The notes: generated from the sequence alone by a model not told the origin. Positions 35,163 to 44,425 are shown, counted from the stretch's first letter. The stretch is DNA of 64,000 nt from Thecamonas trahens ATCC 50062 (GCF_000142905.1 NW_013657664.1:62001-126000); one strand, 5' to 3'. Numbers and translations are program-made.

Positions 35163-36798
35163 ATCGTCGTCGTCGTCGTCGGGTCCCTCGTCCACACAGG
35201 CCACCGCTGCTGGTGCTGTAGTGCCGACCTCGACAGCTAGCAAATCCAGCCGCAGCGGGCGGTCGAAGCGGTCTTCACGCGAACGGACCGGATCCGGGAG
35301 CAAGCTGTCGCGCGGAACGTCCAAGTCCAAGCACCGGCGTTCGCGCGGGAGCAAGGCCAAGATCAAGTCCAAGGCGGCCAAGCGCAGTCGCCACAAGTCT
35401 CGGCCCGAGCCGATACAGGCCTACGAAGACTCGTACCAGGACGCCGTCGCCCGGTTTGAGCAGTACGACCAGTACGAGTCGCGGCTGCTCTCCATGGCAG
35501 CCACTGACGATCCGATCACAGCGTCAGACTCGGGCTCGGGCTCGTCGTCGACCTTCTCCTCGCTCTCGGGCTCGTCGTCGAGCTCAGGCTCGCAGCTCGC
35601 AGTACAGCCGGGCGGAGGCCGCATGGGCTCGCATCCTGTGGTGATCGAGGAAGACAAGGTGCTGGGCAAAGGCAACTTTTCCACCGTCTACCGCGGTTAC
35701 CTTGGGGATGTCGCAGTGGCCATCAAGATCCCACGCGTCCCACCGGAGCTGCAAAAGCCCGACGCCAACATGTCAGCCGCCAAGCTGCAGGCCCGTATCA
35801 AGCGGCGGAAAAAGGTCAAGTCACCCGAGTGGCTGTGGAACCAGGAGCTGTCTATGCTGCGCGCAGCGTGCGCCAGGCCACGCTCCAAGTACGTCTGCCG
35901 CCTTGTCGGCGAGGGCACGTTTGTACGGCCAGGCAGCGACGACGATGATGTGGTCAAGGGCCTCATCTTCAAGATGTATGTCGGCGGCACGCTCACCGAC
36001 CACATCAACAAGCGGAAGGGCGAGCACGGCGGCCTCCCGCAGGCCGCCTTTCTCAAGCACGCCCGCGAGATGGCCGACGGCCTCGCCTTTCTCCACGCCC
36101 GGAACATTGTCTTCCGCGACCTCAAGCCCGACAACTGCCTCATCTCGCAGCCGGTCGGTGGCCACCTGGTCCTCGCAGACTTTGGGCTGGCCCAGAATGC
36201 AGGGCTGCCGTCGCTCCACGGCATCCTCGGGACCCGAACCTACATGGCGCCCGAGGGCTTCTCCGGCAAGCGGCTTGTTCAGCCGGCGCTCGACGTCTGG
36301 TCCTTTGGTTGTTGCCTCATCCACATGTGGTGCGGCGTCCGGCCGTGGAACGACTACTCGCGCGACGAGTTCCATGAGGCCCGACACAACTTTGAGACGC
36401 CCGAGCTGCCCATCGATGACTTTGACCAGCACAAGATGATGGTCCGTGATTACCGCCAGCTCTGGCTCGAGCAAAAGGTGCGCGACCTCATGGAGCGAGC
36501 CGTCGTCTACGACGCCGACGACCGCACCCTCACTGCCGCCCTCGCCGCCCGCATCCTCCGCCACCTCATCCATGTCGTCGCCTCGGAGCGCAAAATTGCC
36601 CAGAAGAGCTCGGCCTCGTTCTCCTCGCGCTCCCGTCGCTCCACCTCCAAGCGCTCGTCCTCCCGCCGCCACACCCGCGACCGCGATCGCAGCGCCAAGC
36701 GCCGCTCGCGCCAGTCCAAGCACACACCGCCGCGCCCGACCACCGCGCCTCCCGCCTCGTCATCTTCGACAACCTCGTCGTCGTCGACGTCTTCGTAG
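34265..36798 (+). CDS. TKL-like Ser/Thr protein kinase with long Ser/acidic/basic N-terminus; frame break at about 34907-34910
   Basis: LGKGNFSTVY, VAIK, FRDLKPDN, DFG, YMAPE and DVWSFG motifs. The upstream Ser-rich ORF joins the kinase frame on adding one A. Start uncertain. Confidence 0.8.
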
Positions 36799-36915: not shown

Positions 36916-39900
36916 ATGGATGCCGAAGAGCTTCCGCTACTCGGAGGAGAGGAACGCGGCATAGTAGGGCATGGCAGAGGGTGGCAGGAGTGTCTGTACG
37001 GTGGGCTGGAGAGCAGACTCGCCGATGACCTTGTGCTTGTTCTGGTGGCGGTCAACGTGATCTCGTTTGTGCTCTCGACAGTGGATGCCATCGACGACAA
37101 AGTGGGGACGGTGTTTGATGTCATCGAAGCTGTCTCGGTGGCCCTCTTCACCATCGAGTATGGTCTACGGATGGTGGCGATCGGCGTAGAAGACAAGTAC
37201 GCTGGTTGGTCTGGTCGCGCAAAGTGGATGGTCTCATTCTTCTCGCTCGTCGATCTCGCTGCCATCATGCCGTTCTACGTCGGCTTGGCTATCGGCGATG
37301 ATGTCGGCACCACGCAGTTTGTGCGCATCTTGCGTGTCTTTCGCATGTTTCGCGCCGAGGGCCGGCTCGTCGAGGCCTTTACTCTGCTGGATGATGTGGT
37401 GCGGGCGAACCGGGCTCTCCTGGCTACTTCGTCGTTCATGGGCGCTGCGCTATGGCTTCTTCTTGCCGGCGTGTTGTATGCAACCGAGAAGGACAACCCC
37501 GATGTGGCTGGAGAGTACGATACCTTCTTCAAGGCACTCTGGTACGCGCTGCTCAACTTGCTTGGCGAGTTCCCGATCGCTGCCGAGCTGTCTAGCGCCG
37601 GCAAGGCGGTCTCTTGCTTCACTGTCGTCTTTGCAGTCGGATTCTTCTCGATCCCAACCGGGATTATCGGCGCGGGCCTGCTTGACATGCTGACCGAGCG
37701 GCGCAATGCGCGTGCTGTCGCAGATGACAGCCGTGATGCCGCCAACGTCAGTCGAGAACATAGTCTCTGCCGTGGATGTGAAGCTTCCGCCCGTCAAGCT
37801 CACATTGCCGCCAAGGGGCTCGGTGGCCGCCTTTATCTTGTACTCGACGGTGTCGGCGTTTGGGGCAGGATCATCGAGGCCTGCATCATGGCTCTCATTG
37901 TTGTCAACGTGGTAGTGTTTTCGATCTCGACTCTACCAGACATTGGCTACGACGGTGCGTTCTTTGTGTTTGAGGCAATGACGGTCGGCCTGTTTTCGGT
38001 CGAGTACCTGCTCCGGCTGTGGACAGTGGCGTTTGGTACAGCTGGCGAGGGCGAGACGAGCTGGCAGGCTCGGGCGCGATGGGTTGTCTCGTTTGAGTCT
38101 GCCGTGGATCTAGCGTCGATTGTTCCGTTCTACGTCGACCTCGCGTTGACAGGGACGGATGTCTCGCCGACGACGCTGCTGCGAGTGCTGCGGCTAGTTA
38201 GGCTGCTCAAGGCCGACTCGTATGTCCATGTCTTTGATCTGATGGACGATGTGGTGCGGGCAAACGGGGCGATGTTGGCGACAACGGCGTGGGTGGCGCT
38301 GGTGGTGTGGATACTGGCGGCGTCGCTGATGTATGCCACCGAGCGGCACAACAGCAATCTCGAGGTTGCGTCCGAGTTTGAGTCTGTGCCCGAGGCGCTG
38401 TGGATCACCTTTCTCAACCTGACTGGCGAGTACCCGCTGGCAGACTACACTCCGTGGGGCAAGGTTGTGTCGTCAGTGGTGGCACTCGTGGCCATCGGCG
38501 TCGCCGCGCTACCGACCGGCATCTGGGCGGCCGGCTTTGAGGACGCGCTCGCCGAGGCCAAGGCGCACACGGCCGAGGACACCACCGAGTGCGAGCAGTG
38601 CATCTCGCCTGAGCTCGCAGCATCATCGGCGCGGCTGCGACTGCGAGCGGCGGCGTTTGTGCCGCTGGCGGCGCACTCGCCACAAAGGGCGGCGCAGCTA
38701 CGGAGCTCGGGACAATCTGCGGCGGCTCGAGCACCGGACTGGATACGCAGCCTGTACGCCTTTGTCTCGGGTGCAACTCGTGCCGGAGCAGCGGCCGAGC
38801 TTGTGGTGGTGGGCCTCATCTTTGTCAACACCATCACGTTTGTGCTCGGCTCGGTCGACTCGGTGGCTGCAAGCGCGACTGCGGTCAAGGTCTTTGAAGT
38901 CCTCGAGGGCTGCACGATGGCGGTGTTTGCGGTCGAGTACGCGGCGCGGGTGATAGCGGCGGGAGCAGATGCCAAGTACGCTCGGTTTGGCTGGCCGCGA
39001 CTACGGTACTGCTGCTCACTCTTCGCGCTCCTTGATCTGGCGTGCCTTGTCCCGTATGGCGTGGAGCTTGTAACGCGAACCGAGCTGAGCTCGACGGTTG
39101 TGTTCCGGCTGTTTCGGCTGATGTTCCTGCTCAAATCAGAGTCGTTTGTGAGTGTCTTTACGCTGCTTGACGATGTGTTTGTGGCCAAAGCGCCACTGCT
39201 GCTGTCGTCGGCGTTTGTGGCCGGTGTGTGCTTGATTGTCTTTGCCACACTCTTGCACTACACCGAGCAGCACAACGAGATTGTGGTGAACGATCTAAGC
39301 ATGGCGGCACGATACGAGAGCATCCCGTCGGCGCTGTGGTACACGCTGGTCCACCTGACGGGCGACTACCCGCTGTACCAGTACACGTGGTGGGGCAAGG
39401 GCGTCAACTTTGTGTCTGCGCTCACGGCGGTGGGCGTTGTGGGCATTCCGTCGGCCGCGATTGCTTCGGGCTTTGTCTCTGCGCGGGCGGCAATTGACGG
39501 TGGCGAGTTCGGCGGTGAGCGGGACGACGCACTTCCGCTGATCCCAGCAGCGGGCGACGACGCGCGGTGCCGGCAATGCCGGGTGGAGAGGGCACGCGCC
39601 ACAGGCGTCGCCGGCTGGCTCCACGCACTGTTTGTTGGCGATCTACGCGTCGGCCACTGGCCCAACTACCTCCTCAACGGGCTGATTGCGGTGAATCTTG
39701 TGGCGTTCGCGCTCGGGACCGAGCCAAGTGTCCGCGCGGGAAGCGGCGGGCGGGTGGGCGACGCGCTTGACGTGGTCGAGTGGATCTCGGTAACGGTCTT
39801 TACGATCGAGTATGTGGCACGGCTTGTAGCTGCCGACGCAGATCCTGACTGGGGCTACTCGCGGCTGCGGTACGGGTGCTCGTTCTTTGCGCTCGTTGAT

Positions 39901-40434
39901 CTTACGGCGATCGTGCCATTCTACGTGAGCGTGGCCATCGGTGACAGGACATCTGTATCGACGCTCCTTCGCGCACTGCGAGTGGTGCGGGTGCTCAAGG
40001 GTGAACACTCTGTGGAGGCGTTCACGCTGGTGGACAACGTGGTGGCGGCGACGGGCCGGGTGTTGGCGACGACTGGCTTTGCAGCCGCTCTGGTATGGAT
40101 CATCTCGGCCTCGCTGTTCTACATTGCGGAACGCTCACAGGCGTACACGGATGGCGCTTTTGACAACATGCTTCTCTCGCTCTTCTTCACCATGATCTTC
40201 CTCGGAGGCGAGTGGGCGGTGGTGGACTTTACGCCGTGGGGCGAGGCTGTGGGTGCGTTCACCATCGTGCTCGCCATCGCCATCTTTGCGGTTCCAGGCG
40301 GCATTCTCTTTGACGGCTTTGCCGACATTGCCAATAAGCGGCGTGAGCTGCGAGACCAGCTAGCTTCACGCGATCTGCTCTGCTCTGGCTGCGGCGCGCA
40401 CATCCAATCGTTCGTCCGCCATCACGTGGCCTAG
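36916..40434 (+). CDS. Four-repeat (4x6TM) voltage-gated-like cation channel built from Kv-type units, with non-GYG acidic filters
   Basis: Four repeats each with S1 (..VN..), S2 (F.IEY..R), S3 (VDL.AI.PFY), an Arg-rich S4, pore helix plus G[ED][FYW], and S6 (G..V...IP.G). Confidence 0.88.
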   Translation: MDAEELPLLGGEERGIVGHGRGWQECLYGGLESRLADDLVLVLVAVNVISFVLSTVDAIDDKVGTVFDVIEAVSVALFTIEYGLRMVAIGVEDKYAGWSGRAKWMVSFFSLVDLAAIMPFYVGLAIGDDVGTTQFVRILRVFRMFRAEGRLVEAFTLLDDVVRANRALLATSSFMGAALWLLLAGVLYATEKDNPDVAGEYDTFFKALWYALLNLLGEFPIAAELSSAGKAVSCFTVVFAVGFFSIPTGIIGAGLLDMLTERRNARAVADDSRDAANVSREHSLCRGCEASARQAHIAAKGLGGRLYLVLDGVGVWGRIIEACIMALIVVNVVVFSISTLPDIGYDGAFFVFEAMTVGLFSVEYLLRLWTVAFGTAGEGETSWQARARWVVSFESAVDLASIVPFYVDLALTGTDVSPTTLLRVLRLVRLLKADSYVHVFDLMDDVVRANGAMLATTAWVALVVWILAASLMYATERHNSNLEVASEFESVPEALWITFLNLTGEYPLADYTPWGKVVSSVVALVAIGVAALPTGIWAAGFEDALAEAKAHTAEDTTECEQCISPELAASSARLRLRAAAFVPLAAHSPQRAAQLRSSGQSAAARAPDWIRSLYAFVSGATRAGAAAELVVVGLIFVNTITFVLGSVDSVAASATAVKVFEVLEGCTMAVFAVEYAARVIAAGADAKYARFGWPRLRYCCSLFALLDLACLVPYGVELVTRTELSSTVVFRLFRLMFLLKSESFVSVFTLLDDVFVAKAPLLLSSAFVAGVCLIVFATLLHYTEQHNEIVVNDLSMAARYESIPSALWYTLVHLTGDYPLYQYTWWGKGVNFVSALTAVGVVGIPSAAIASGFVSARAAIDGGEFGGERDDALPLIPAAGDDARCRQCRVERARATGVAGWLHALFVGDLRVGHWPNYLLNGLIAVNLVAFALGTEPSVRAGSGGRVGDALDVVEWISVTVFTIEYVARLVAADADPDWGYSRLRYGCSFFALVDLTAIVPFYVSVAIGDRTSVSTLLRALRVVRVLKGEHSVEAFTLVDNVVAATGRVLATTGFAAALVWIISASLFYIAERSQAYTDGAFDNMLLSLFFTMIFLGGEWAVVDFTPWGEAVGAFTIVLAIAIFAVPGGILFDGFADIANKRRELRDQLASRDLLCSGCGAHIQSFVRHHVA

Positions 40435-40717: not shown

Positions 40718-41701
40718 ATGTCTGCAGACGGCGGTTCATGCTCAGGCTCGGGGTCTACCTCGGGCGACGAGAAGGTTGTGGACCTGACGTACCAGGCGCC
40801 AGGGGTAGCGGAAGCGCTGGACGCCGAGGTGGAGGTGGTGGACGCGACAGGGAATGGGTGGACGGAGATGGAGCTGCTGAAGGGACTGGCCAAGTTGCAG
40901 ACTGTGTGCTTGCGGAACAACAGGGTGAGCAAGGTGGAATGTCTGGAGGCGGCCACAGAGCTGGAGGAGCTTGACCTGTATGGCAACTCGGTCAAGGTCA
41001 TCGAGGGTGTGGCTCACCTCTCCAAGCTCGTCATCCTCGACTTCTCGTTCAATCTCATCCGGTCGATGGCCCCGCTCGGTGTGCCCGACATTTCGTTTAC
41101 CGGCCTGCGCAAGCTGTATCTGTGTTCGAACAAGATCACCAAGATCGAGGGGCTGGAGAAGCTGACGGCCCTGGAGATGCTCGAGCTCGGATCGAACCGG
41201 CTGCGGACGATCGAAGGCCTGGAGACGCTCACAGCGCTGCGGGAGCTGTGGCTTGGGCGCAACAAGCTCGAGAAGATCACCGGGCTGGAGAACCTGACCA
41301 ATCTGGAGATCTTGGACTTGCAGTCGAACCGGCTGACCAAGCTCGAGGGGCTCGAGGCCAACACCAAGCTGACGGACCTGTACCTGGCACACAACGCGAT
41401 CGAGAGCCTCGAGGGCATTGCGCAGCTTGTGGCGCTGGAGACGTTTGACATCTCAAACAACGCGCTGTCGGCGATTCCGGCCGACGAGCTCCCGCGAGCA
41501 GCGCTGACCGAGTTCTGGATGAACCACAACACCGTGAGCGACTGGGCCGACGTCGAGGTGCTCAAGGACGCACCTCAGCTCGAGACGGTGTACTTTGAGG
41601 GCAACCCCATTGCCGAGCACCCGCGGTACCGCGCCATCATGGCCGACACGCTCCCGCAGATCAAGCAGATCGACGCGACGCTGATCCGGACGCGGATGTA
41701 A
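40718..41701 (+). CDS. PPP1R7: PP1 regulatory subunit SDS22 (LRR)
   Basis: SDS22-type LRRs (LDFSFNLIR, LELGSNRLR, LWLGRNK, LQSNRL) and LRRcap YR..IMADTLPQIKQIDAT. Confidence 0.93.
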   Translation: MSADGGSCSGSGSTSGDEKVVDLTYQAPGVAEALDAEVEVVDATGNGWTEMELLKGLAKLQTVCLRNNRVSKVECLEAATELEELDLYGNSVKVIEGVAHLSKLVILDFSFNLIRSMAPLGVPDISFTGLRKLYLCSNKITKIEGLEKLTALEMLELGSNRLRTIEGLETLTALRELWLGRNKLEKITGLENLTNLEILDLQSNRLTKLEGLEANTKLTDLYLAHNAIESLEGIAQLVALETFDISNNALSAIPADELPRAALTEFWMNHNTVSDWADVEVLKDAPQLETVYFEGNPIAEHPRYRAIMADTLPQIKQIDATLIRTRM

Positions 41702-41770: not shown

Positions 41771-42603
41771 TCACACAATAGTGCCCAGCGAGGCAGCCTG
41801 CTGATGTGCATGCTCCTTGACCTTGGCCACAAGAACTTCGTGGATGAGAGCGGCGCCCTTCATAGCCAGCGAGACGAGAGCGTCGTAGACGTCGAGCGGG
41901 ATGCGGTCGTTGATCTTGACCAGCGAGAGCGTGGCCTCGGTGGGGAGCATGGCCAGCAGCAGCTCGGGGCCGCCACCGGACGAGTCCTCCAGATAGTTGA
42001 GATCCAGCACGTTGGCGCCGTCGATGTGGCCGGCCGAGCAGGCGACGACAAAGTCCTTGAGCGGGATGCCAGCGTCGATGAGCGCCAGAGTAGCCGCGTT
42101 GATGGCAGCAGCAACGTTGCCACCATCCGCCTGCAGAACATGGACAAAGATGTCGATTTGTGAACGCGGGAAGAGCTCTGTCAGAATGACCGGCTCAAAG
42201 GTAGCCACCAGCATCTGCGAGACCTCTGCCGACCGCTTGTCGCCCTTTGAGCTCTTCTTCCGCTCGCCTGTGGCAAAGGTAGCCATACCAAACTCTGCAC
42301 GAACAACAGCACGATCATGCTTGGCCATCGAAGCCCGCCGCACTTCCCGGGGTCCGTACACTGCCGCCACCACCTTGGTATTGCCCATCTCCACATAGGC
42401 TGATCCGTCGGCCCGCGAGAACAGATCCATCCGGGCTTGCAGCTTACGGAGCTCGTCCGGCCGCCGTCCGTCCAGCCGCAAGCCTTCTGGGGACACAAAC
42501 TCTCTCCGGGACTGTATACAAGGAAGGGGGAAGGGGAGGGTGAGTGTAGGGGGGGGGGGGGGCAAGGAGGGCATGGGGTCGGTCAAGGCTTGCGGCGTAC
42601 CAT
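41771..42603 (-). CDS. EXOSC4: Exosome subunit Rrp41; exon 1 is ATG only (42603-42601), exon 2 is 42511-41771
   Basis: EFVSPEGLRLDGRR, ADGSAY.EMGNTKV, VLQADGG and ALIDAGIP motifs. GTACGC...ACAG intron 42600-42512 gives MSRREFV. Confidence 0.95.
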
Positions 42604-42827
42604 GGTACGAAGGCGCTGGAGTGGGGTGATCCTGATCCTGATCCTGATCAAGTTTGTGTGGGCAGATTCGATGGTCGAGTGGGCGGACAGGGATAGCGGA
42701 TGAGTAATGCGTGTAAGATGGTATGTGTGCTAGAGACAGGAGAAGGTGAGTGTAGTTGGAAGGGGGTTAGATCTTTGGGTCGTGGCCTGATTGAAGCAGA
42801 GTGAGGTACAGCGGAGAGCACCGCAGT

Positions 42828-42880
42828 GGAGAGTATCGCAGCGGAGAGCACCGCAGCGCGGCGCAGCACAGCGCGGCGCA
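42828..42880. repeat. Short degenerate 15-nt tandem repeat (GCAGCGGAGAGCACC)
   Basis: Three or more units upstream of RRP41. Confidence 0.7.
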
Positions 42881-42970
42881 TGGCTGGTGGGGGCGGGACG
42901 TCTGGGTGGGCCGAGAGTGACATGCTCAATCGGGGCGGCGTGTGCTCGCGGAAGGCGAAGATTTGAGAGC

Positions 42971-44425
42971 TTACAATCTCACGACGTTGTTGATAACAAG
43001 GCAAGAATCGGAGGAGCGCTTAGAGCAGAGAGCGACGAGGTTGTGGATGGCGCCGGTGAAGATGTTGTTGGCAACCATGATCGCACCTGAAGACTCACGA
43101 GTGCGGTCGATCTGCGAGAAGCACGTGCCCGAGATGCAGTTGTTCTGCAGAAAGAGCGAGTCGGTGATCGAGACCGCGGTGGCGCCCGCGATGGTGACGG
43201 CAGGCAAACCCTTGTGATGGACGTCCCACTGGGTAAAGGTGCATCCAGAGAAAGAGACCATGCCGGAGCCGGCGACCGAGGCAATCGAGTACGATGGGCC
43301 CCAGAAGGCGGTGTTGGAGACGGTGACAGTGCCCGAGTTGGTCGGTGCGACAACGAGCTCGATCGAGGTGACCGAGACATTGGCCCATTGCGGCGAGGCG
43401 AACGAGGTGAACTCACAGGCTGCGATCTGCAGGCCCCACACGTCGACTTGCTCGATCAAGACCGACGCGTTGTACGCCATGTCAGCGCCACTCTCCTCGA
43501 GAATGCCATTGGTGGCGCCGGCTGCGGTCTCGATAAAATGGAACCCGACCGAGTAGGCAAAGGCAAAGAGGCGGGTGCAGAACTGCCAGTCAGAGCGGCC
43601 AAGGACAAATGCCCGTCCTCTAGTCAGCTGCAGCCGCATGTACTCGGGATGCTGCGAGTACCAGGGGTTAAAGTGGATGTCAATCATGCGACCGATGTCA
43701 GTCACATCGTCGACGTAGATGCCGATGAGCGACGGCTGACCGTAGACCCGGGCGATGTAGTGGCGGGCGGCGCCAACAGCCGAAATGAACTGGTACGGAT
43801 TGACGCCCTCGACATCGATGACGGCAGAGTTGACCGAGAGCGAGAGAGTGAATGGGTACGGGGTCGGCGCAGCCTTGGGGTCCTGGTCTGGATAGTAAAG
43901 GACCACGCCGCGGAGGGTGGCGTCCTGCTTGAGGGTGGCGAATGGAGTTCCCGACGCCTCGCCGCGGCCACCCACCACCAGCAGCACCGATCCATGTGTG
44001 GGCGGCAGCCCACCCTCGCCAACGTTGTGTGCTGGTGGCGCGCGATACGTGCCCTCGAGCGACACGCCGACGGGCACGGTGATCGACGAGTGGAAAGTGA
44101 ACTGGCCGGCCGGAACCCAGACGATGCCGCCACCTGCAGCCAGAGCAGCGTTGAGAGCCGCCTGGAACGGCACCGCGTTGTCAAACGAGCCATCACCGGC
44201 CCTGGCACCATGATCCAGCACGTTAGTCACGGAGTTTTGCTCCGTCGTGCCTCTGCGAGCCGGGCCAACGCTAGATCCATGCCATCGATCGTGTCGTGCC
44301 TCGAGCGCACGGGCAAGGAGGCGGCCTTGGACGCGCCGTGCTGACGACATGCCGACGGAGAGGGAGACAAGAACGAGCAAGAGAGGTAATATAGTCCGCA
44401 CAGCAATGCGCGTGGTACCAGGCAT
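42971..44425 (-). CDS. Secreted pectate-lyase-superfamily right-handed beta-helix protein (putative glycoside hydrolase)
   Basis: Signal peptide; NVLDHGARAGDG..DN..FQAALNAA..GGGIVWVPAGQF matches the Pectate_lyase_3 N-terminal motif; beta-helix-like periodicity follows. Confidence 0.8.
   Translation of the reverse strand: MPGTTRIAVRTILPLLLVLVSLSVGMSSARRVQGRLLARALEARHDRWHGSSVGPARRGTTEQNSVTNVLDHGARAGDGSFDNAVPFQAALNAALAAGGGIVWVPAGQFTFHSSITVPVGVSLEGTYRAPPAHNVGEGGLPPTHGSVLLVVGGRGEASGTPFATLKQDATLRGVVLYYPDQDPKAAPTPYPFTLSLSVNSAVIDVEGVNPYQFISAVGAARHYIARVYGQPSLIGIYVDDVTDIGRMIDIHFNPWYSQHPEYMRLQLTRGRAFVLGRSDWQFCTRLFAFAYSVGFHFIETAAGATNGILEESGADMAYNASVLIEQVDVWGLQIAACEFTSFASPQWANVSVTSIELVVAPTNSGTVTVSNTAFWGPSYSIASVAGSGMVSFSGCTFTQWDVHHKGLPAVTIAGATAVSITDSLFLQNNCISGTCFSQIDRTRESSGAIMVANNIFTGAIHNLVALCSKRSSDSCLVINNVVRL

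What the first reader, a model, noticed from the sequence alone, without database searches (positions are those of the whole stretch)
36916..40434. Compact four-domain channel assembled from Kv-like units: an independent origin of 24-TM architecture
Seen: four complete 6TM repeats in only 1172 aa, uninterrupted by introns. Each has Kv/prokaryotic-Kv hallmarks: IDL.AI.PFY in S3, F.SIP.ALW-type turret and pore helix, T.WGK.V at the start of S6, and an IP.G hinge. None has the T-x-E/D-x-W filter with second pore helix of Nav/Cav/NALCN/TPC. Known: characterised 24-TM channels are Nav/Cav/NALCN/Cch1 and CNGK, while Kv-type channels assemble from four separate subunits. Inference: a distinct pseudo-tetrameric channel family that arose by separate duplications from a Kv-like ancestor.
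Basis: partly seen in the sequence, partly recalled or inferred. Interest (0 to 1): 0.92.

Follow-up and report, generated by a model that had tools for sequence, protein, structure and literature searches.

The report
Four-repeat cation channel built from Kv units
This Thecamonas gene encodes a 24-helix voltage-gated channel whose four repeats descend from potassium-channel-like units, not from sodium/calcium channels, so the four-in-one channel design with an acidic pore ring evolved a second time.

Summary
Window 36916-40434 (+) is one open frame of 1172 aa with four Pfam Ion_trans repeats (E 6.8e-67). It is Thecamonas trahens XP_013759166.1, annotated only as 'ion transporter'.

- The four repeats are 31-44% identical to each other.
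- A profile of them finds only Kv channels among the 60 best PDB matches (KCNQ2 105.8 bits). It scores the genome's six Nav/Cav/NALCN-type loci at 35.5 bits or less.
- In domain trees all repeats of the family form one clade (95/95). Its sister (97/100) is a eukaryotic single-domain channel family with an MLTGQG pore.
- Nav/Cav, TPC and TxDxW domains lie across a 100/100 branch. Forcing the repeats together with Nav/Cav domains is rejected (p-AU 6.9e-5).

The gene belongs to a large, unnamed four-repeat family found in an apusomonad, Mesostigma, dinoflagellates, diatoms and chrysophytes. Each repeat has its own conserved pore motif (GEFP / GExP / GDYP / GEWA), giving an E/E/D/E ring in place of TVGYG.

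I infer a voltage-gated, non-K-selective, probably Ca2+-permeable cation channel. No paper I could reach describes the family. Selectivity, location and expression were not tested. Other first-stage notes of this scan cover parts of this same stretch.

The parts
36916..40434 (+). Complete ORF, 1172 aa plus stop. It encodes a four-repeat (24-TM) voltage-gated-type cation channel, Thecamonas trahens XP_013759166.1 / KNC47682.1.
37003..37740 (+). Repeat I (aa 30-275). S4 at aa 135-150 has four arginines at every third position. The pore loop is LLGEFP with E218.
37828..38580 (+). Repeat II (aa 305-555). S4 at aa 421-435 carries R,R,R,K. The pore loop is LTGEYP with E505.
38749..39525 (+). Repeat III (aa 612-870). 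S4 at aa 728-743 is charge-depleted: R,R, then M where the third charge should be, then K. The pore loop is LTGDYP with D817.
39658..40365 (+). Repeat IV (aa 915-1150). S4 at aa 1017-1031 carries R,R,R,K. The pore loop is LGGEWA with E1099.
37567..37569 (+). Codon of E218, the first member of the E/E/D/E ring. The other three are E505 (38428-38430), D817 (39364-39366) and E1099 (40210-40212).
   Evidence: The four acidic positions are conserved, repeat by repeat, in nearly all family members listed.
37768..37779 (+). CxxC motif (CRGC) about 25 residues after S6 of repeat I. Equivalent motifs follow the other repeats: CEQC (38590-38601), CRQC (39568-39579) and CSGC (40381-40392).
   Evidence: All four motifs occur only in this protein and its closest homologue P0002 (39% identity), and are absent from 21 other family members. 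AlphaFold2 confidence is below 50 in these linkers.
36925..36942 (+). N-terminal EELPLL, an acidic dileucine-type motif.
   Evidence: 10 of 36 N-terminally complete family members match [DE]xxxL[LIVM], and others carry a similar ..PLL. L8 is nearly invariant in alignment A2. A sorting function is inferred only.
36964..36987 (+). In-frame 24-nt GT..AG segment (aa 17-24) that the RefSeq gene model treats as an intron.
   Evidence: Not tested against RNA.

Best explanation
The gene encodes a single-chain, pseudo-tetrameric, voltage-gated cation channel. It belongs to an unnamed family that is widespread in protists and algae.

Origin:
- The family's four 6TM repeats arose by internal duplication of a Kv-like single-domain channel.
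- This happened independently of the duplications that produced Nav/Cav/NALCN/Cch1 and TPC channels.
- The four-repeat state predates the split of the sampled lineages, because repeats I, III and IV are each orthologous across species.

How it most likely works (inferred):
- Four S4 sensors drive a Kv-type S6 gate with a P-x-G hinge through long helical S4-S5 linkers, in a domain-swapped arrangement. Three sensors carry four basic residues. Repeat III carries three. All four keep the S2 F/E and S3 D of the charge-transfer centre.
- The K+ filter is gone. The pore loop is two residues shorter than TTVGYGD, and an acidic residue sits at the position of the GYG tyrosine in each repeat (E218, E505, D817, E1099).
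- This gives a G-E-x-P loop like the T-I-G-E-T-P of CNG channels and an asymmetric E/E/D/E ring like the Cav EEEE locus.
- The pore should therefore not select K+. It should pass cations and bind divalent ions, making it either Ca2+-permeable or a monovalent pathway blocked by Ca2+.

The confidence given (0.7) is for the whole statement. I put the evolutionary and architectural part at about 0.9 and the selectivity part at about 0.55.
For: Shown:
- Four Ion_trans repeats in one ORF.
- Repeats 31-44% identical to each other.
- phmmer and profile searches of the PDB: the 60 best matches are all Kv, from KCNQ2 at 105.8 bits over the whole repeat through Kv4, Kv2, Kv1 and Kv3. No Nav, Cav, TPC, BacNav or CNG chain appears among them.
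- Own-genome scan with the repeat profile: the single-domain C78 channel scores 149 bits, the two TVGYGD Kv genes 85 and 78 bits, and Nav/Cav-type domains 35.5 bits or less.
- Nearest single-domain proteins of repeat length: bacterial Ion_trans + Ion_trans_2 K+ channels at 30-35% identity.
- Trees: family repeats form a clade at 97* (142 rows) and 95/95 (careful tree). Family plus the MLTGQG single-domain family 97/100. Nav/Cav + TPC + TxDxW split off at 100/100. Repeat III clade 100/96, repeat IV 97/98, repeat I 89/83.
- AU test rejects a common clade with Nav/Cav domains: delta lnL 113.3, p 6.85e-5.
- Repeat-specific pore motifs and the E/E/D/E ring are conserved across the family in a library of 1.84 billion representatives (582 proteins at E <= 1e-30; most of the 150 best hits inspected are family members).
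- The AlphaFold2 model (pLDDT 74, pTM 0.74, pore regions 82-92) is a 24-TM pseudo-tetramer. It superposes over its full length on Cav2.2, Cav1.2, Nav1.7 and NALCN (TM 0.58-0.65 at 12-14% identity). It has one pore helix per repeat and helical S4-S5 linkers.
- Complete transcripts of homologues encode all four repeats.

Inferred from established knowledge (my own, not retrieved here):
- An acidic residue after the filter glycine and loss of GYG give non-selective, Ca2+-binding pores in CNG channels.
- Rings of four acidic residues give Ca2+ selectivity in Cav channels.
Against: - No electrophysiology, localisation or expression data exist for any member.
- Selectivity cannot be read reliably from a filter sequence.
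- The polarity of gating (opening on depolarisation or on hyperpolarisation) is not predictable.
- Trees of ~250 columns with long branches are fragile. Repeat II is not resolved as a clade, and the order of the duplications is unresolved.
- With sparse sampling the single C78 row jumped inside the family.
- No CNGK, animal Kv or KvAP sequences were in my trees. Their relation rests on PDB profile scores and on Thecamonas paralogues.
- Verret et al. 2010, cited by Fux 2018 (PMC6259924) for 'EEDE' pores in non-animal 4x6TM channels, could not be read. Members of this family may already have been counted as 'Cav-like'.
Confidence: 0.7

Rival explanations
1. It is a very divergent member of the canonical four-domain lineage (Nav/Cav/NALCN/Cch1). 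On this reading the 24-TM architecture has a single origin, and the Kv-like look is convergence or a tree artefact.
For: - The whole-chain model superposes on Cav, Nav and NALCN chains (TM 0.58-0.65).
- The acidic four-residue ring resembles the EEEE/EEDD loci.
- Fux 2018 mentions EEDE pores among non-animal 4x6TM channels.
Against: - Only single-chain four-domain structures can align over the full length, so that match reflects architecture alone (12-14% identity).
- The repeat profile scores Nav/Cav-type domains of the same genome at 35.5 bits or less, against 78-149 bits for Kv-like genes.
- All 60 top PDB sequence matches are Kv.
- A 100/100 branch separates the two groups.
- The AU test gives p 6.85e-5.
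- There is no T-x-E/D-x-W motif and no second pore helix.
Confidence: 0.03
2. [quoted passage not shown]
For: - The scaffold is Kv7-like from S1 to S6.
- Four-repeat proteins with true TTxGYGD filters exist in the databases: P0112 and P0121.
Against: - No repeat has T-V-G-Y-G.
- The loop is two residues shorter than in the K+ channels, and an acidic residue replaces the tyrosine.
- Pfam's K+-pore model Ion_trans_2 does not match this protein, the family members scanned (P0005, P0008, P0141) or any family hit in the precomputed table. It matches P0112, P0121, P0185 and the bacterial relatives.
- The published tandem channels keep TVGYG.
Confidence: 0.1
3. It descends from a CNGK-type (tetraKCNG) four-repeat cyclic-nucleotide-gated channel that lost its four CNBDs.
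For: - CNGK is the one published four-repeat channel of the K+-channel/CNBD side.
- The G-E-x-P loop resembles the CNG filter.
Against: - No CNBD or C-linker is present. The gaps between repeats and the tail after repeat IV are 19-51 aa, and Pfam finds only Ion_trans.
- The S4-S5 linkers are long and helical, whereas CNBD channels have short ones (criterion from PMC7576140).
- No CNG, HCN or KCNH chain is among the 60 best PDB matches.
- Thecamonas CNBD-type channels form a separate 100/100 clade.
- The sister group is a single-domain family.
- No CNGK sequence was in the tree, so this exclusion is indirect.
Confidence: 0.03
4. The locus is an annotation or assembly artefact (four tandem single-domain genes read through), or a decaying pseudogene.
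For: High G+C favours long chance ORFs. I obtained no RNA evidence for this locus.
Against: - 3516 nt without a stop.
- A homologue at 39% identity over 97% of the query, plus many more four-repeat homologues, including complete transcripts.
- Repeat-specific motifs are conserved.
- The charge-transfer-centre and S4 residues are invariant across the repeats.
Confidence: 0.02

Closest known systems
Kv7/KCNQ and prokaryotic 6TM Kv channels (Ion_trans + Ion_trans_2)
   Same: - Best sequence relatives of each repeat: KCNQ2 at 105.8 bits over S1-S6, bacterial Kv at 30-35% identity.
- S4 with R/K at every third position.
- S2 F/E and S3 D of the charge-transfer centre.
- Long S4-S5 linker and a single pore helix.
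- The '..T..GK' entry to S6 and the P-x-G hinge.
   Different: - Those channels are tetramers of separate subunits with a TTVGYGD filter.
- Here four diverged repeats sit in one chain.
- The loop is two residues shorter, with E/E/D/E in place of the GYG tyrosine.
Nav/Cav/NALCN/Cch1 four-domain channels
   Same: - 24-TM single-chain pseudo-tetramer.
- The model superposes over its whole length (TM 0.58-0.65).
- An asymmetric ring of four acidic residues at the pore mouth.
   Different: - Separate origin: 100/100 split and AU p 6.85e-5.
- No T-x-E/D-x-W motif and no second pore helix.
- The repeats are far more alike (31-44% identity).
- In Thecamonas the extracellular loops are short and the whole protein is only 1172 aa.
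[quoted passage not shown] 2020, PMC7576140)
   Same: Kv-like 6TM units concatenated in one polypeptide, with position-specific divergence of the repeats.
   Different: - Two repeats, not four.
- A TVGYG-type K+ filter.
- The two-repeat proteins in my trees (P0185, P0171, P0191) fall outside this family.
CNGK / tetraKCNG
   Same: A four-repeat pseudo-tetramer that arose outside the Nav/Cav lineage.
   Different: - CNGK has a CNBD after every repeat and a K+-selective filter, and it belongs to the CNBD-channel group with short S4-S5 linkers.
- None of these features is present here.
CNG channel pore (T-I-G-E-T-P)
   Same: A G-E-x-P loop with an acidic ring at the position of the K+-channel tyrosine. 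This comparison rests on my own knowledge of CNG channels.
   Different: Resemblance of the filter only. No CNBD is present, the two-residue shortening lies on the other side of the glycine, and the ring is asymmetric.
Eukaryotic single-domain 'MLTGQG' channels (Thecamonas C78 = P0229 and relatives), undescribed as far as I could find
   Same: - Sister clade of the four-repeat family (97/100).
- Shares the shortened L-T-G pore loop.
- C-terminal EF-hands occur in some members of both groups.
   Different: One 6TM unit per chain, and Q-G in place of E/D-aromatic after the glycine.

Membership tests
Pfam Ion_trans (PF00520), voltage-gated ion channel superfamily | Match to the 6TM Ion_trans profile above the curated cut-off | tested here: met
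   Four stretches, 225.6 bits against a cut-off of 25
Four-domain Nav/Cav/NALCN/Cch1 channels | Four 6TM repeats in one polypeptide | tested here: met
Four-domain Nav/Cav/NALCN/Cch1 channels | Repeats share ancestry with Nav/Cav domains I-IV | tested here: not met
   100/100 split from six Thecamonas Nav/Cav-type loci. AU p 6.85e-5. Profile score 35.5 bits or less.
Four-domain Nav/Cav/NALCN/Cch1 channels | P-loop T-x-E/D-x-W with a second pore helix | tested here: not met
   The loops read GEFP / GEYP / GDYP / GEWA. The model has one pore helix per repeat (prediction only).
Kv-like channels (sense of Pozdnyakov 2020) | 6TM unit with a charged S4 and a long S4-S5 linker, closest to Kv rather than to CNBD channels | tested here: met
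Kv-like channels (sense of Pozdnyakov 2020) | T-V-G-Y/F-G selectivity filter | tested here: not met
   No Ion_trans_2 match.
Kv-like channels (sense of Pozdnyakov 2020) | One (or, in the published tandems, two) 6TM units per chain | tested here: not met
   Four units per chain
CNGK / tetraKCNG | A cyclic-nucleotide-binding domain after each repeat | tested here: not met
   Only Ion_trans is found, and the inter-repeat gaps and C-terminal tail are 19-51 aa
CNGK / tetraKCNG | Repeats group with CNGK/CNBD-channel repeats in a phylogeny | tested here: inconclusive
   No CNGK sequence was available. Thecamonas CNBD-type channels are a separate 100/100 clade.
Two-pore channels (TPC) | Two repeats with ..NxPD.. 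and ..NW.. type filters, clustering with TPC repeats | tested here: not met
   Thecamonas TPC-type loci (C51, C60, C34, C12x, C58) lie on the Nav/Cav side of the 100/100 split

The most novel reading that the evidence does not exclude
This would be a third, ancient class of pseudo-tetrameric voltage-gated cation channels. A potassium-channel scaffold would have independently reinvented both hallmarks of Cav channels: four fused, specialised repeats and an asymmetric acidic ring (E/E/D/E). It would act as a voltage-gated Ca2+-permeable channel in many protist and algal lineages, and its surviving single-domain sister family (MLTGQG, often with EF-hands) would mark the ancestral state.
Probability: 0.45. 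Interest if true: 0.85.

Novelty: new variant of a known kind. Interest (0 to 1): 0.72.

Why it matters
Textbook accounts derive all 4x6TM cation channels (Nav, Cav, NALCN, Cch1) from one pair of duplications. CNGK is treated as the lone outsider.

This family shows that the fusion of four subunits into one chain, followed by specialisation of each repeat, happened at least once more. It started from the Kv side of the superfamily and again ended with a ring of four acidic residues in the pore.

That gives a natural replicate for asking why pseudo-tetramers evolve, and how an acidic ring behaves on a one-pore-helix K+-channel scaffold.

It also adds a candidate Ca2+/cation entry pathway to surveys of excitability in protists and algae, including diatoms, dinoflagellates and early streptophytes. 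Those surveys currently count only Cav, TPC, EukCat and TRP-type channels.

The Thecamonas protein is compact (1172 aa with short loops), which makes it an attractive target for expression and cryo-EM.

Tried and rejected
I made no expression or splice check and tried no other route.
- The protein-atlas search did not hold the window's exact sequence. With P0001 it returned only generic 'ion transport' clusters from diatoms, haptophytes and bacteria, all below 0.9, so these are leads only.
- The AU test on the 142-row alignment did not finish in two 300-s runs. I replaced it with a 63-row set.
- EukCat single-domain channels were considered as relatives and rejected. They are BacNav-like with T-L-x-x-W filters (PMC6509283).
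- CxxC after every S6 as a family-wide feature was rejected. All four motifs occur only in this protein and P0002.
- Two-round duplication pattern: repeats III+IV pair at 94 SH-aLRT in the big quick tree, but this is not recovered in the careful tree. The order of duplications is unresolved.
- Verret et al. 2010 is not held, so the origin of the 'EEDE' remark in Fux 2018 is unchecked.
- Literature searches by accession, 'EEDE', 'Kv-like four repeats' and 'CNGK pseudotetrameric' found no description of the family.
- One misread of my own: the first pore-motif extraction picked the wrong reference row and printed nothing. I repeated it correctly.
Full report
**What is there.** Window 36916-40434 (+) is a single open frame of 1172 codons.
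- Pfam finds Ion_trans four times (E 6.8e-67) and nothing else.
- The protein is Thecamonas trahens ATCC 50062 XP_013759166.1 / KNC47682.1, named only 'ion transporter'.
- The RefSeq model differs in one respect. It removes an in-frame 24-nt GT..AG segment (aa 17-24) in the cytoplasmic N-terminus.
- The neighbours are unrelated genes on the same strand: a protein kinase (35221-36798) and an LRR protein (40718-41701).
- The frame closes 15 codons upstream of the ATG (1187-aa open frame).

**Anatomy of the repeats.** The repeats (aa 30-275, 305-555, 612-870, 915-1150) are 31-44% identical to each other. From my own knowledge, that is far more than the domains of Nav/Cav channels.
- Invariant across all four are the S2 F..EY..R and S3 DL....P of the gating charge-transfer centre, two S4 arginines, the filter glycine, and the S6 proline and glycine.
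- S4 carries R,R,R,R in repeat I, R,R,R,K in II and IV, and R,R,-,K in III.
- The pore loops read LLGEFP, LTGEYP, LTGDYP and LGGEWA. The acidic positions are E218, E505, D817 and E1099.

**Predicted structure.** An AlphaFold2 model built on 22 family sequences has pLDDT 74.1 and pTM 0.74, with the pore regions at 82-92.
- Each repeat has a helical S4-S5 linker of about 13 residues.
- Each repeat has one pore helix, then a 10-11 residue loop, then S6. There is no second pore helix.
- Foldseek superposes the whole chain on Cav2.2, Cav1.2, Nav1.7 and NALCN (TM 0.58-0.65, 12-14% identity). This shows the same 24-TM pseudo-tetramer architecture. It does not show kinship, because only single-chain four-domain structures can align over the full length.

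**Whose relatives are the repeats?**
- By sequence, the 60 best PDB matches of the protein and of a profile of its four repeats are all Kv channels. KCNQ2 scores 105.8 bits over S1-S6, followed by Kv4, Kv2, Kv1 and Kv3. No Nav, Cav, TPC, BacNav or CNG chain appears.
- The closest proteins of single-repeat length are bacterial Ion_trans + Ion_trans_2 K+ channels at 30-35% identity.
- Thecamonas has at least 89 Ion_trans matches. From their pore motifs I could label six canonical four-domain loci with T-x-E/D-x-W pores, five two-repeat TPC-type loci, four single-domain TxDxW channels, two TVGYGD Kv genes and several CNBD-type channels.
- The repeat profile scores the Nav/Cav-type domains at 35.5 bits or less and the two Kv genes at 85 and 78 bits. 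One single-domain gene on contig 78 (L031, = P0229) scores 149 bits.

**Phylogeny.**
- In a 142-row domain tree, all 68 repeats of 17 four-repeat proteins form one clade (97*). A 100* branch of length 1.83 separates Nav/Cav + TPC + TxDxW domains from everything Kv-like.
- With the C78 family sampled densely (72 rows, careful IQ-TREE under LG+C20 PMSF), supports are ultrafast bootstrap / SH-aLRT:

| Group | Support |
|---|---|
| Four-repeat family | 95/95 |
| Single-domain family | 100/100 |
| The two as sisters | 97/100 |
| Nav/Cav + TPC + TxDxW split | 100/100 |

- Holding the family's repeats and the Nav/Cav domains as one clade costs 113.3 log-likelihood units (p-AU 6.85e-5).
- Repeat I (89/83), III (100/96) and IV (97/98) are each clades across species, so the four-repeat state is ancestral to the sampled family. 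Repeat II and the order of duplications are unresolved.
- With sparse sampling, the single C78 row moved inside the family. The sister relation therefore rests on the denser tree.

**The family.**
- A profile search of 1.84 billion representatives gives 582 proteins at E <= 1e-30. Most of the 150 best hits I inspected are four-repeat proteins or fragments of them.
- Named sources include Mesostigma viride, Amphidinium massartii, Amphora coffeiformis and Paraphysomonas.
- Each repeat has its own conserved pore motif: I NLFGEFPL, II NLSGExPL, III HLTGDYPL, IV FLGGEWA. The E/E/D/E ring is therefore a family character.
- Aligned to bacterial Kv channels, the loop is TTVGYGD minus two residues, with the acidic residue at the tyrosine position. 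The '..T..GK' entry to S6 is kept.
- The sister single-domain family has LMLTGQG.P.G.LPWYTK, which shares the shortened L-T-G loop.
- Some members of both families end in EF-hands. The Thecamonas four-repeat protein does not.

**Mechanism (inferred).** This is most likely a domain-swapped, voltage-gated pseudo-tetramer on a Kv scaffold. Its pore has lost K+ selectivity and carries an asymmetric carboxylate ring. By analogy with the CNG T-I-G-E-T-P filter and the Cav EEEE locus (my own knowledge), I expect cation conduction with divalent binding. That means either Ca2+ permeation or a Ca2+-blocked monovalent current. Gating polarity, selectivity and location are untested.

**Is it known?**
- The accession occurs in no searchable paper.
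- The 2018 survey of four-domain channels lists seven Thecamonas entries, two of which have identical S4s. None of their S4 sequences match this gene, and the six distinct entries correspond in number to the six canonical loci I found.
[quoted passage not shown] That survey reports only two-repeat tandems with TVGYG filters.
- Fux 2018 treats Nav/Cav/NALCN-type channels and CNGK as the known 4x6TM types.
- Caveat: Fux 2018 cites Verret 2010 for 'EEDE' pores in non-animal 4x6TM channels, and I could not read that paper.
- Subscription journals are mostly outside the library.

**Verdict.** Observation confirmed and interpretation supported. This is a new, independently evolved variant of the pseudo-tetrameric voltage-gated cation channel, and it belongs to a widespread but undescribed family. 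The evolutionary claim is strong, about 0.9. The functional claim (non-K-selective, Ca2+-permeable) is an inference at about 0.55. First-stage notes on the E/E/D/E ring, the CxxC motifs, the N-terminal dileucine and the weak repeat-III sensor cover parts of this same stretch. I checked each against the sequence and the family.

Noticed in passing
L031:1997-3625 (+) = G000 contig 78, about 42496-44124: A single-domain 6TM channel (P0229, RefSeq model 405 aa) with pore MLTGQGIDYSG. It belongs to a eukaryote-wide single-domain family with a conserved LMLTGQG.P.G.LPWYTK pore, and some members have C-terminal EF-hands. It is the sister group of the four-repeat family, and I found no description of it.
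   Followed up: partly
P0006 (1253 aa, JGI metagenome): This family member carries its repeats in the order I-II-IV-III: GGEWAK in third place and LTGDYPL in fourth. The tree confirms it. This would change the order of subunits around the pore, or it may be an assembly error.
   Followed up: partly
P0112 (1493 aa) and P0121 (1748 aa): Two other predicted four-repeat Kv-like proteins have canonical TTxGYGD/N filters in every repeat and no CNBD (Ion_trans + Ion_trans_2 only). They are unrelated to this family. The P0112 repeats are almost identical to those of the two-repeat P0191, and P0121 sits next to Shaker-type Kv genes. They may be further independent concatenations, or fused gene models.
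   Followed up: partly
P0139, P0141, P0148, P0152, P0160 and others (1200-2100 aa): A long-branch sub-family of the four-repeat channels. In repeat I the glycine before the acidic residue is usually replaced by K, R, C or H (e.g. NLVKEHPL). Repeat II reads HGEWPW and repeat IV reads GEWAN. A basic residue next to the ring may alter selectivity.
   Followed up: no
window 37768-37779, 38590-38601, 39568-39579, 40381-40392: CxxC follows S6 of every repeat (CRGC, CEQC, CRQC, CSGC). The same four positions carry CxxC in the closest homologue P0002 (39% identity) but in none of 21 other members. Eight cysteines below the gate could bind metal. AlphaFold2 confidence there is below 50.
   Followed up: partly
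window 36925-36942: An N-terminal acidic dileucine-type motif (EELPLL). Similar ..EPLL / ..TPLL motifs recur near the N-terminus of many family members, which suggests a conserved sorting signal.
   Followed up: partly
alignment A2 (family consensus), S5-to-pore loops of repeats I, III and IV: Most family members carry cysteine-rich insertions in the extracellular turrets. The Thecamonas protein and P0002 lack them, which accounts for their compact size.
   Followed up: no
G000 whole genome: Thecamonas has at least 89 Ion_trans matches. They include six canonical four-domain loci (C12:280k, C11:268k, C28:62k, C24:24k, C32:8k, C12:50k), five two-repeat TPC-type loci and four single-domain TxDxW channels. 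That is a very large channel set for a 28.7-Mb genome.
   Followed up: partly
window 35221-36798 (+) and 40718-41701 (+): The flanking genes are a protein kinase (Pkinase, E 1.2e-33) and a leucine-rich-repeat protein. They lie 117 nt and 283 nt from the channel ORF, and I see no evident functional link.
   Followed up: partly
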